Below, one piece after another: positions 13,416-15,737 of a DNA stretch of 64,000 nucleotides. Source of the DNA: Dendrobates tinctorius (lineage: Eukaryota); the NCBI RefSeq assembly GCF_039654945.1, contig NW_027361685.1, forward strand, positions 18,476,001 to 18,540,000, given 5' to 3'. The notes below the pieces were generated by a model. It made no database searches. It was not told the origin of the DNA and saw only the letters and a program-made list of their open reading frames with translations. The first letter of the stretch is position 1; each line of letters starts with the position of its first letter. The translations under genes were made by a program, and so were the position numbers.

Positions 13416-13956
13416 GGGGATGTGCACACGTTGTGGATTACCCCGAGACATAAAAAAGCCAGGCTGGAGTTTGCCAAAACTTACCTGAAAAAGCCTAAAA
13501 CATTTTGGAAGAATGTTCTCTGGTCAGATGAGACAAAAGTAGAGCTTTTTGGGCAAAGGCATCAACATAGAGTTTACAGGAGAAAAGAAGAGGCATTCAA
13601 AGAAAAAAACACGGTCCCTACAGTCAAACATGGCGGAGGTTCCCTGATGTTTTGGGGTTGCTTTGCTGTTAAATGACCGGCGTTTTACCTGAGATTTAGT
13701 GCAGATTTAGTGCGGATTTCCCCTGCGTTTTTTACACCTGCGGATTCCTATAATGGAGCAGGTGACAAAACGCTGCGGATTCCGCACAAAGAATTGACAT
13801 GCTGCAGATTTAAATCCGCAGAAAATCCACAGCGTGTGCACTGTGTTCTTCATTTCTCATAGACTGTACTGTACAACGCAGCAGAAACTGCTGCAGATCC
13901 GCAGGACCAAATCCACTGCAGATCTGCAGCAGAATCCGCAACGTGTGCACACAGCC
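13416..13956. mobile_element. Palindromic Harbinger-type MITE carrying a captured Tc1 fragment
   Basis: TTA|GGGGATGTGCACACGTTG ... CAACGTGTGCACACAGCC|TAA termini; internal TGCGGAT/ATCCGCA repeats. Confidence 0.7.
13438..13668 (+). repeat. 231-bp inverted duplicate of Tc1 transposase segment 14751-14981
   Basis: Identical by eye to the reverse complement of 14751-14981; same peptide TPRHKK...WSDETK...FWGCFA. Confidence 0.95.
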
Positions 13957-14103
13957 TAACTAGTGTTTGCTGCTCCTACTGGGAAGTGAAGTCTGGCACT
14001 TGTAGTGCCACAGCAGCAGTTAGTGCTTGGTGACAAATAGCTGTGGAATAGTGTGTTTCTATACAGCGATTGTTAGTGGCATGGACATGTTACTAGTGTG
14101 ATA

Positions 14104-15737
14104 CAGTTGTGGCCAAAAGTATTGACACCCCTGCAATTCTGTCAGATAATACTCAATTTCTTCCTGAAAATGATTGCAAACACAAATTCTTTGGTATTAT
14201 TATCTTCATTTAATTTGTCTTAAATGAAAAAACACAAAAGAGAATGAAGCAAAAAGCAAAACATTGATCATTTCACACAAAACTCCAAAAATGGGCCAGA
14301 CAAAAGTATTGGCACCCTCAGCCTAATACTTGGTTGCACAACCTTTATCCAAAATAACTGCGACCAACCGCTTCCGGTAACCATCAATGAGTTTCTTACA
14401 ATGCTCTGCTGGAATTTTAGACCATTCTTCTTTGGCAAACTGCTCCAGGTCCCTGATATTTGAAGGGTGCCTTCTCCAAACTGCCATTTTTAGATCTCTC
14501 CACAGGTGTTCTATGGGATTAAGGTCTGGACTCATTGCTGCCCACCTTAGAAGTCTCCAGTGCTTTCTCTCAAACCATTTTCTAGTGCTTTTTGAAGTGT
14601 GTTTTGGGTCATTGTCCTGCTGGAAGACCCATGACCTCTGAGGGAGACCCAGCTTTCTCACACTGGGCCCTACATTATGCTGCAAAATTTGTTGGTAGTC
14701 TTCTGACTTCATAATGCCATGCACATGGTCAAGCAGTCCAGTGCCAGAGGCAGCAAAGCAACCCCAAAACATCAGGGAACCTCCGCCATGTTTGACTGTA
14801 GGGACCGTGTTTTTTTCTTTGAATGCCTCTTCTTTTCTCCTGTAAACTCTATGTTGATGCCTTTGCCCAAAAAGCTCTACTTTTGTCTCATCTGACCAGA
14901 GAACATTCTTCCAAAATGTTTTAGGCTTTTTCAGGTAAGTTTTGGCAAACTCCAGCCTGGCTTTTTTATGTCTCGGGGTAAGAAGTGGGGTCTTCCTGGG
15001 TCTCCTACCATACAGTCCCTTTTCATTCAGACGCCGACGGATAGTACGGGTTGACACTGTTGTACCCTCGGACTGCAGGGCAGCTTGAACTTGTTTGGAT
15101 GTTATTCGAGGTTCTTTATCCAACATCCGCACAATCTTGCATTGAAATCTCTTGTCAATTTCTCTTTTCCGTCCACATCTAGGGAGGTTAACCACAGTGC
15201 CATGGGCTTTACACTTCTTGATGACACTGCACGCGGTAGACACAGGAACATTCATGTCTTTGGAGATGGACTTGTAGCCTTGAGATTGCTCATGCTTCCT
15301 CACAATTTGGTTTCTCAAGTCCTCAGACAGTTCTTTGGTCTTCTTTCTTTTCTCCATGCTCAATGTGGTACACACAAGGACACAGGACAGAGGTTGAGTC
15401 AACTTTAATCCATGTCAACTGGCTGCAAGTGTGATTTAGTTATTGCCAACACCTGTTAGGCACCACAGGTAAGTTACAGGTGCTGTTAATTACACAAATT
15501 AGAGAAGCATCACATGATTTTTCCAACAGTGCCAATACTTTTGTCCACCCTCTTTTATGTTTGGTGTGGAATTATATCCAATTTGGCTTTAGGACAATTC
15601 TTTTTGTGTTTTTTCATTTAAGACAAATTAAATAAAGATATTAATACCAAAGAATTTGTGTTTGCAATCATTTTCAGGAAGAAACGGAGTATTATCTGAC
15701 AGAATTGCAGGGGTGTCAATACTTTTGGCAACAACTG
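14104..15737 (-). mobile_element. Full-length Tc1-family IR/DR transposon (1634 bp)
   Basis: TA|CAGTTGTGGCCAAAAGTATTGACACCCCTG ... CAACTG|TA. About 140-bp near-perfect TIRs plus inner direct repeats (GACAAAAGTATTGGCAC at about 14300 and 15530). Confidence 0.97.
14323..15357 (-). CDS. Tc1 DD34E transposase, intact 344-aa ORF
   Basis: [15 protein letters not shown] start, paired-like HTH, WSDE, QQDND-34 aa-E (SPDLNPIE), ends GCATKY. No stops or frameshifts. Confidence 0.93.

What the first reader, a model, noticed from the sequence alone, without database searches (positions are those of the whole stretch)
13438..14981. 231-bp inverted copy of an intact Tc1's catalytic core beside the element: a possible Mu-killer-like self-silencing allele
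Seen: 13438-13668 equals the reverse complement of 14751-14981 with no mismatch found by eye. It has no TIR or TSD, sits inside an unrelated Harbinger MITE, and lies 1082 bp from the donor segment, downstream of the transposase in its direction of transcription. Known: read-through of inverted TE duplications yields hairpin siRNAs that silence the family in trans (maize Mu killer). Inference: a locally templated repair insertion; minus-strand read-through past the Tc1 left TIR would fold into a 231-bp duplex over the WSDE region.
Basis: partly seen in the sequence, partly recalled or inferred. Interest (0 to 1): 0.72.

Follow-up and report, generated by a model that had tools for sequence, protein, structure and literature searches.

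The report
Inverted Tc1 fragment copied into MITE
A 231-letter piece of a jumping gene's enzyme-coding region was recently copied, backwards, into a small neighbouring transposon 1 kb away in a poison-frog genome; this looks like an ordinary DNA-repair accident of a known kind, and the idea that it silences the jumping gene is untested and has weak support in vertebrates.

Summary
Window 13438-13668 is the exact reverse complement of 14751-14981: 231 nt, no mismatch, 1,082 nt apart.

- **The donor.** It lies inside a complete DD34E Tc1 element (14104-15737) with a TA target duplication and an open 344-aa transposase ORF on the minus strand.
- **The copy.** It sits directly after the 27-nt left terminal repeat of a 547-bp MITE-like element (13413-13959).
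- **Why the neighbour is the source.** The copy shares an amino-acid change (E176) seen in none of 14 relatives. No other dispersed repeat in the window exceeds about 98.7% identity.
- **Best reading (0.68).** This is a recent templated "gap-filling" or template-switch repair insertion, the cis-biased process described for single-copy Pack-TIRs in animals, frogs included (PMC8277862).
- **The hairpin.** A transcript crossing both arms would fold into a 230-bp duplex in silico. An ATTAAA signal lies between the stop codon and the copy. No RNA, small-RNA or read data could be obtained.
- **The silencing idea.** Dicer-dependent endo-siRNAs look mouse-specific among the vertebrate oocytes surveyed, so the Mu-killer-like role remains speculation.
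- **Earlier scan notes.** The scan has noted other "Mu-killer-like" fold-back transposons elsewhere in this genome, none tested for function. It has not noted this structure before.

The parts
13413..13959 (.). MITE-like non-autonomous TIR element, 547 bp including the 231-bp insert; the acceptor of the copied fragment
   Evidence: 27-nt imperfect terminal inverted repeats (pair I4); seven GCGGATT/GCAGATT-type subterminal motifs at 13701-13933; a related TIR stub at 37517-37600; no coding capacity
13413..13439 (+). Left terminal inverted repeat of the MITE; its last two bases (TT, 13438-13439) overlap the copied fragment as microhomology
13933..13959 (-). Right terminal inverted repeat of the MITE
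   Evidence: pair I4
13438..13668 (+). 231-bp inverted copy of Tc1 transposase codons 126-203; it reads in sense on the + strand and has no TIR or TSD of its own
13669..14750 (.). 1,082-nt spacer (the loop of the putative hairpin): rest of the MITE, 144 bp of host DNA, the Tc1 left IR and the 3' third of the transposase gene
14104..15737 (-). Complete Tc1 (DD34E) element, flanked by TA target-site duplications at 14102-14103 and 15738-15739
   Evidence: (pair I2)
14326..15357 (-). Open 344-aa transposase ORF (stop at 14323-14325); D156, D248 and E283 are present; 8 residues are private relative to 14 relatives
14751..14981 (-). Donor segment inside the transposase gene
14209..14214 (-). ATTAAA polyadenylation-type hexamer in the Tc1 3' inverted repeat, 109 nt after the stop codon and upstream of the copied fragment in the direction of transcription

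Best explanation
This is a real and recent templated repair insertion. A DNA break, or a stalled synthesis step, occurred inside the MITE-like element just after its left terminal repeat. It was repaired by copying 231 nt from the Tc1 element 1.08 kb away, in inverted orientation, before synthesis returned to the MITE.

This is the gap-filling or template-switching route described for single-copy Pack-TIRs and for 'filler DNA'. Its by-product is a perfect inverted repeat of part of an open transposase gene. No function is shown for it. Most likely it is a neutral and perhaps still polymorphic structural variant.

Shown: the structure, the identity of the arms, the integrity of the Tc1 ORF, and the in-silico hairpin.

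Inferred: the repair mechanism, the neighbour as donor, and the recent date.
For: - **Exact repeat.** 231/231 inverted identity with 1,082 nt between the arms.
- **Recent.** Other dispersed repeats in the window are 90-98.7% identical. At 2.3% divergence the chance of 0 differences in 231 bp is 0.005. The 95% upper bound on divergence is 1.3%.
- **Neighbour is the donor.** The neighbouring Tc1 has 8 residues private against 14 family members. One of them, E176 where the relatives have K or N, lies in the fragment and is present in the copy. The closest relative found is only 95% identical in protein.
- **Younger than the Tc1 insertion.** If those private changes arose in place, a duplication as old as the Tc1 insertion would be expected to show about 4.7 differences, P(0)=0.009.
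- **Not a transposition product.** The fragment is internal to Tc1 and has no TIR or TA duplication.
- **Junction.** There is a 2-bp TT microhomology at the left junction.
- **Published precedent.** In PMC8277862, 56.9% of animal Pack-TIRs lie under 15 kb from the parent, mostly under 5 kb. Microhomology has a median of 2 bp. Frogs are included (60.9% in cis).
Against:
- No other copy of the MITE family was available. The pre-insertion sequence, any accompanying deletion and the copy number of the composite are unknown.
- The 2-bp microhomology is not significant on its own (P=0.16).
- 'Private' substitutions are judged against only 14 relatives, about four of them from frogs.
- Pack-TIRs as published were defined by capture of non-TE sequence; here the cargo is itself a TE fragment.
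Confidence: 0.68

Rival explanations
1. Mu-killer-like silencer. Transcription across both arms gives a 231-bp hairpin RNA. This is processed into small RNAs that silence this Tc1 family in trans. The structure is the same as in the best explanation; the added claim is function.
For: - A minus-strand transcript from 15420 to 13380 folds with 230 of 231 arm pairs; the duplex energy is about -450 kcal/mol.
- No canonical polyA hexamer lies between 14209 and 13380, so any read-through would reach the copy.
- Tc1 elements are reported as expressed in poison-frog oocytes (PMC6278860).
- The arms cover coding sequence of an open transposase gene.
- Mu killer and Ac/Ds inverted duplications show the principle in maize (PMC3440606; bioRxiv 10.1101/2020.01.07.897926).
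Against: - No transcript or small-RNA data were obtainable.
- An ATTAAA signal lies in the Tc1 3' repeat before the copy.
- Mu killer acts through plant RNA-directed DNA methylation, which vertebrates lack (established knowledge).
- Oocyte endo-siRNAs were found only in mouse among 12 vertebrates, with piRNAs dominant elsewhere (PMC10964541).
- Long hairpin RNA was poorly processed outside mouse oocytes and gave no transcriptional silencing in trans (PMC3245926).
- The family is diverged (91-96% protein identity among relatives), and only 231 nt would be targeted.
- Many inverted TE structures exist in this genome without evidence of function.
Confidence: 0.07
2. Assembly or polishing artefact. 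The 231-bp copy does not exist in the animal; it was created by a chimeric read or a mis-join in a repeat-rich region.
For: - Perfect identity is what an artefact would give.
- The region is very repeat-rich, with a long 22-bp tandem array from 16306 and an N gap at 19577-19802.
- No read support could be checked.
Against: - The copy is displaced by 1 kb. It is bounded on both sides by unique MITE sequence that continues to a matching right terminal repeat.
- Fold-back read artefacts give palindromes that meet at one point, not a short internal segment embedded in another element (general knowledge of such artefacts).
- The geometry matches a known biological process.
Confidence: 0.1
3. Mobilised composite. 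The MITE that carries the Tc1 piece is one member of a multicopy Pack-MITE subfamily, so the fragment was not acquired at this locus, or was acquired here and then spread.
For: - Multicopy Pack-TIRs exist in frogs.
- Other fold-back or chimeric elements in this genome proved to be multicopy families (earlier notes, untested here).
- Both MITE terminal repeats are retained, so the composite could still be mobilised.
Against: - The copy is 231/231 identical to the neighbour and shares its private E176.
- Published multicopy Pack-TIRs were located distally from the parent, not beside it.
- No second copy lies in the window.
- Protein-database searches with the junction ORF found nothing above 85% identity and no exact match. 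This is a weak test, because this genome appears to be poorly represented there.
Confidence: 0.08
4. Remnant of a second Tc1 copy. It hopped locally from the neighbour into the MITE in inverted orientation and later lost both ends.
For: - Tc1/mariner elements tend to reinsert nearby (established knowledge).
- Its identity to the neighbour would follow.
Against: - It needs an insertion plus two deletions within the time in which no substitution occurred.
- No TA dinucleotide footprint or TIR remnant lies at either junction.
- Abortive gap repair of DNA transposons keeps the ends and loses the middle, the opposite of what is seen (established knowledge).
Confidence: 0.04

Closest known systems
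Single-copy Pack-TIRs / filler DNA made by transposition-independent gap filling (Tan et al. 2021, PMC8277862)
   Same: A TIR element keeps both terminal repeats and holds a foreign segment copied from a parent a short distance away on the same chromosome. There is short (2-bp) microhomology at a breakpoint, and the event post-dates the TE insertion. Frogs are among the species where this is described.
   Different: The captured segment is not host gene sequence. It is an internal piece of another, still open transposase gene, in inverted orientation, so it creates a perfect 231-bp inverted repeat with its parent. The breakpoint lies directly after the terminal repeat, whereas published breakpoints are skewed towards the interior. 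Copy number and the accompanying deletion could not be measured.
Maize Mu killer (Muk)
   Same: An inverted duplication holds part of the transposase gene of an autonomous DNA transposon. A read-through transcript would form a long hairpin.
   Different: Muk is a separate derivative locus with two TIRA copies and a hairpin of about 4 kb, transcribed from a flanking gene, and it works through plant siRNA and RdDM (PMC3440606). Here one arm is the intact element itself. The arms are 231 nt with a 1.08-kb loop and include no TIR. No transcript or small RNA is known, and the host lacks RdDM.
Ac/Ds inverted duplications from alternative transposition that trigger siRNA silencing (bioRxiv 10.1101/2020.01.07.897926)
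   Same: A rearrangement next to an active DNA transposon creates an inverted duplication of its own sequence, a possible start of silencing.
   Different: Those arise by transposase action on element ends. This fragment has no ends and fits polymerase template switching. The maize cases were shown to silence; this one was not tested.
Fold-back Tc1, hAT and Chapaev3 derivatives noted elsewhere in this genome by the scan
   Same: They are inverted duplications of transposase-coding sequence in the same poison-frog genome, each able to form a hairpin RNA and none tested for function.
   Different: Those are self-contained, often multicopy non-autonomous elements made of two halves of one element. 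This is a short piece lodged in an unrelated MITE beside its intact donor.

Membership tests
Tc1/mariner, DD34E autonomous element (the donor) | TA target-site duplication and terminal inverted repeats | tested here: met
   TA at 14102-3 and 15738-9; 139-nt inverted repeats at 96%
Tc1/mariner, DD34E autonomous element (the donor) | Open transposase with paired HTH DNA-binding domain and a DDE triad with 34 residues between the second D and E | tested here: met
   344-aa ORF; HTH_SB 2.3e-18, HTH_Tnp_Tc3_2 3.7e-25, DDE_3 3.8e-10; D156, D248, E283. Activity was not tested; 8 private substitutions include one in the [10 protein letters not shown] motif
Pack-TIR / gap-filling capture | TIR element with both ends retained and an internal segment of foreign origin | tested here: met
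   Terminal repeats 13413-13439 and 13933-13959 enclose 13438-13668, which matches Tc1 only
Pack-TIR / gap-filling capture | Identifiable parental copy, usually in cis within a few kb | tested here: met
   Parent 1,082 nt away, 100% identical, shares private E176
Pack-TIR / gap-filling capture | Microhomology at one or more breakpoints | tested here: inconclusive
   2-bp TT at the left junction, none at the right; chance probability 0.16
Pack-TIR / gap-filling capture | The same TE without the insert exists (paralogues or an orthologous locus); single copy of the composite | not testable with these tools
Mu-killer-type hairpin silencer | Inverted duplication of part of the autonomous element's transposase gene | tested here: met
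   it is short (231 nt), lacks a TIR, and one arm is the intact gene itself
Mu-killer-type hairpin silencer | A transcript that spans both arms, driven by a flanking or element promoter | not testable with these tools
An ATTAAA hexamer at 14214-14209 lies before the copy
Mu-killer-type hairpin silencer | Small RNAs from the arms and heritable silencing of the family in trans | not testable with these tools
   No small-RNA data. Literature prior is low for vertebrates outside mouse oocytes
PIF/Harbinger MITE (the acceptor) | 3-bp TWA target-site duplication as a direct repeat | tested here: inconclusive
   Flanks read TTA on the left and TAA on the right; a 2-bp TA duplication fits equally well
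PIF/Harbinger MITE (the acceptor) | Terminal repeats shared with an autonomous Harbinger; many copies | not tested
   No Harbinger transposase lies in the window; only one related end stub at 37517-37600

The most novel reading that the evidence does not exclude
The repair accident created a working trigger locus. Read-through or host transcription across 13438-14981 yields a 231-bp double-stranded RNA, or antisense precursor, that feeds siRNA or piRNA production in the frog germline. This would dampen a fish-related, horizontally acquired Tc1 family. It would be the first naturally arisen Mu-killer-type allele seen in a vertebrate, caught next to its donor.

A second untested consequence is that recombination between the perfect arms could flip the 1.08-kb spacer and break the transposase gene.
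Probability: 0.06. Interest if true: 0.8.

Novelty: new member of a known kind. Interest (0 to 1): 0.3.

Why it matters
How a host first acquires a sequence-specific trigger against a newly invading DNA transposon is an open question. Maize has shown that chance inverted duplications can do it. This locus is a clean, dated vertebrate example of the first step, an inverted copy born beside an open element of a family shared with fish, in a genome where Tc1 elements are abundant and reported as expressed in oocytes.

As it stands, it documents cis-biased templated repair between two transposons, which is already known in kind. It would matter only if small-RNA and read-through data showed the hairpin is made and processed.

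Tried and rejected
3. **Exact look-ups.** The transposase, the chimeric 134-aa ORF and a MITE ORF are not in the protein collection.
4. **Junction ORF search.** Only ordinary Tc1 fragments came back, at 85% identity or less. No second copy of the junction appeared; the test is weak.
5. **Metagenome scan with the MITE terminal-repeat pattern.** It returned 15 loci that match only the 19-21-nt pattern itself and are chance hits.
6. **Protein word search with the 49-aa ORF of the MITE right end.** There were no candidates.
7. **Scan notes by sequence for the MITE.** Blank, which means nothing.
8. **Rfam on 12000-17000.** Only sub-threshold miRNA-like hits on a small MITE hairpin.
9. **Bacterial-type promoter/terminator scan.** Irrelevant for a frog.
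10. **Second filler segment.** I looked for a further template for 13669-13710 in the window and found no 11-mer match.
11. **The diverged Tc1 at 52544-53568 as donor.** Rejected: it is 66-75% identical.
12. **Retrocopy origin.** Rejected: no poly(A), no target duplication, and the segment is internal.

Full report
**1. The observation**

The repeat finder on 12000-17500 reports arms 13438-13668 and 14751-14981: 231 nt, 100% complementary, 1,082 nt between them (pair I1). BLAST of the window against itself gives the same pair. It is the only dispersed repeat of at least 80 bp in the 64-kb window at 100% identity. The other dispersed repeats are 90-98.7% identical.

**2. Anatomy**

*The donor element*
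- The donor arm lies in a complete Tc1 element at 14104-15737.
- Its terminal inverted repeats are 14101-14239 and 15602-15740 (139 nt, 96%, pair I2).
- TA duplications sit at 14102-3 and 15738-9.
- The minus strand carries an open 344-aa ORF (15357 to 14326, stop at 14323-5).
- The ORF has Pfam HTH_SB, HTH_Tnp_Tc3_2 and DDE_3.
- The catalytic triad is D156, D248, E283, which is DD34E spacing.

*The copied fragment*
- It corresponds to residues 126-203: the end of the second HTH and the first catalytic Asp only.
- On the + strand it reads in sense, so it is inverted relative to the gene.
- It lies downstream of the gene in its direction of transcription.

*The acceptor element*
- The copy sits in a 547-bp element at 13413-13959.
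- This element has 27-nt imperfect terminal repeats (pair I4).
- It has seven GCGGATT/GCAGATT-type subterminal motifs and no coding capacity.
- A related end stub lies at 37517-37600.
- The flanks read TTA and TAA, so the Harbinger assignment is plausible but not shown.

*The junctions*
- The copy begins on the last two bases (TT) of the left terminal repeat, which Tc1 also has at that point. This is a 2-bp microhomology.
- The right junction has no microhomology.
- Two bases of microhomology occur by chance at 16% of random junctions, so this fits template switching but is no proof of it.
- Three other repeat-adjacent sequences of this family continue after GGATT with a YTSCTGCRG-like motif: the right end, an internal TIR-like copy at 13826-13850, and the stub at 37520. 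The left end lacks this motif.
- I infer from this that some MITE sequence was probably lost in the event. That is an inference from three sequences only.

**3. Who was the donor, and when**

*The family*
- The transposase belongs to a cluster (at least 90% protein identity) that holds proteins from Dendrobates, Ranitomeya imitator and the fishes Prochilodus magdalenae and Scomber.
- The window copy is 95% identical to the best relative, a Dendrobates protein.

*Evidence for the neighbour as donor*
- Against 14 relatives, the window copy has 8 private residues.
- One of these, E176 where the relatives have K or N, lies within the fragment and is present in the copy.
- At the 2.3% divergence typical of young repeats in this window, the chance of 0 differences in 231 bp is 0.005.
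- The neighbour, or an unsampled near-twin, is therefore the donor.

*Date*
- If the private changes arose in place, a duplication as old as the Tc1 insertion should show about 4.7 differences, P(0)=0.009.
- The copy is therefore younger than the insertion.
- The 95% upper bound on arm divergence is 1.3%.
- At roughly 1e-9 substitutions per site per year (my assumption), that means at most a few million years, and possibly a segregating variant.
- Gene conversion between the arms could also keep them identical.

**4. Mechanism of origin**

An internal Tc1 piece without terminal repeats or a TA duplication is not a transposition product.

The pattern matches the gap-filling or template-switch route shown for single-copy Pack-TIRs in 100 animal genomes (PMC8277862):
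- 56.9% lie under 15 kb from the parent, most under 5 kb.
- Microhomology has a median of 2 bp.
- Capture occurs after TE insertion.
- 60.9% are in cis in the western clawed frog.

Tc1 elements make up 6.57% of the dyeing poison frog assembly, about 897,000 annotated pieces (PMC11152451). A nearby template is therefore quite often a Tc1, and half of such captures would be inverted. This makes the structure unsurprising in this genome.

Other possible origins are in the rival list:
- a locally hopped second copy that lost both ends;
- a mobilised composite family;
- an assembly artefact.

None could be excluded by direct test.

**5. Does it work as a silencer?**

*For*
- In silico, a minus-strand RNA from 15420 to 13380 pairs 230 of 231 arm positions. 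The duplex energy is about -450 kcal/mol.
- Beyond the ATTAAA signal described below, no canonical hexamer occurs before the copy.

*Against*
- The transposase mRNA meets an ATTAAA hexamer at 14214-14209, 109 nt after its stop codon and inside the 3' repeat. The hairpin therefore needs read-through or an outside promoter.
- No expression data could be obtained.
- Mu killer is a separate locus with two TIRA copies and a hairpin of about 4 kb, read from a flanking gene. It acts through plant siRNAs (PMC3440606). Vertebrates lack RNA-directed DNA methylation (established knowledge).
- A long hairpin expressed in mice gave RNAi only in oocytes and no transcriptional silencing in trans (PMC3245926).
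- Oocyte endo-siRNAs were seen only in mouse among 12 vertebrates, and piRNAs dominate elsewhere (PMC10964541). No frog was in that set.
- Xenopus embryos do make TE-derived small RNAs from intronic remnants, mostly antisense, by an unknown route (PMC3875865).

A small-RNA output is therefore conceivable, but nothing ties it to hairpins. I put an effective silencing role at about 6-7%.

**6. Context**

The window is a TE-dense stretch. It holds Ty3 integrase, several reverse-transcriptase ORFs, a piggyBac-type transposase piece and two C2H2 zinc-finger ORFs.

Exon-like stretches with GT donors flank the TE pair on opposite strands, at 12805-12870 (minus) and about 16100-16197 (plus). I did not test whether they are real exons.

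**7. Earlier scan notes**

The scan's earlier notes on this genome were used as leads only. They list several 'Mu-killer-like' fold-back Tc1, hAT and Chapaev3 elements and one Tc1 with an inverted copy of its flank. The follow-ups found multicopy families and no functional test. They show that inverted transposase duplications are common here. None describes this structure.

**8. Limits**

- No other genomic copy of the MITE or of the Tc1 DNA could be examined.
- The following therefore remain open: whether the structure is present in the reads, the copy number of the composite, the pre-insertion MITE sequence, and any RNA output.

**Verdict**

- The structure is real-looking and cleanly explained: a recent, cis-templated inverted capture of a Tc1 gene piece by a neighbouring MITE.
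- It is a new member of a known kind.
- The silencing reading is not supported by evidence.
- Interest 0.3.

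Noticed in passing
window 14326-15357 (-): The Tc1 transposase falls in a cluster of at least 90% protein identity that mixes poison frogs (Dendrobates, Ranitomeya) with fishes (Prochilodus magdalenae, Scomber scombrus and S. japonicus). Some members are annotated as parts of host genes. This fits the fish-frog horizontal transfer already reported for poison-frog Tc1 (PMC6278860).
   Followed up: partly
window 16306 to beyond 17500; 18300-19200; 19577-19802: A long 22-bp tandem array (at least 41 copies) starts 570 bp right of the Tc1. 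GC skew reverses sign near 18300-19200, which suggests an inverted block of the array. A 226-N gap follows.
   Followed up: no
window 12805-12870 (-) and about 16100-16197 (+): Exon-like stretches ending in GT splice donors lie on opposite strands either side of the MITE+Tc1 pair. The two transposons may sit between divergent first exons or promoters, which would bear on whether the inverted repeat is transcribed.
   Followed up: no
window 30858-31598 (+), 47596-48633 (-): Two multi-finger C2H2 zinc-finger ORFs; the window may lie in a zinc-finger gene cluster.
   Followed up: no
window 4213-6176, 24108-26456, 55434-57921: Three copies of about 2 kb of one repeat at about 97.7% identity, in mixed orientation. 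They serve as a yardstick for young-repeat divergence in this window.
   Followed up: no
window 52544-53568: A second, old Tc1 remnant, about 66% identical to the intact one, with a 177-aa ORF at 52540-53073 (-).
   Followed up: no
window 59974-60669 (+), upstream of RT ORF 61835-63586: An ORF with weak GDSL-lipase/OSK-domain hits lies just before a reverse-transcriptase ORF, as in esterase-bearing LINE ORF1s.
   Followed up: no
window 13826-13850 and 13876-13944: The MITE holds an internal TIR-like copy in the orientation of its right end, and a small 29-nt-arm hairpin that draws only sub-threshold miRNA-like Rfam hits.
   Followed up: partly
window 8604-9859 and 32760-33519: Tandem arrays with periods of about 110 bp and about 40 bp, 96-98% between units.
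   Followed up: no
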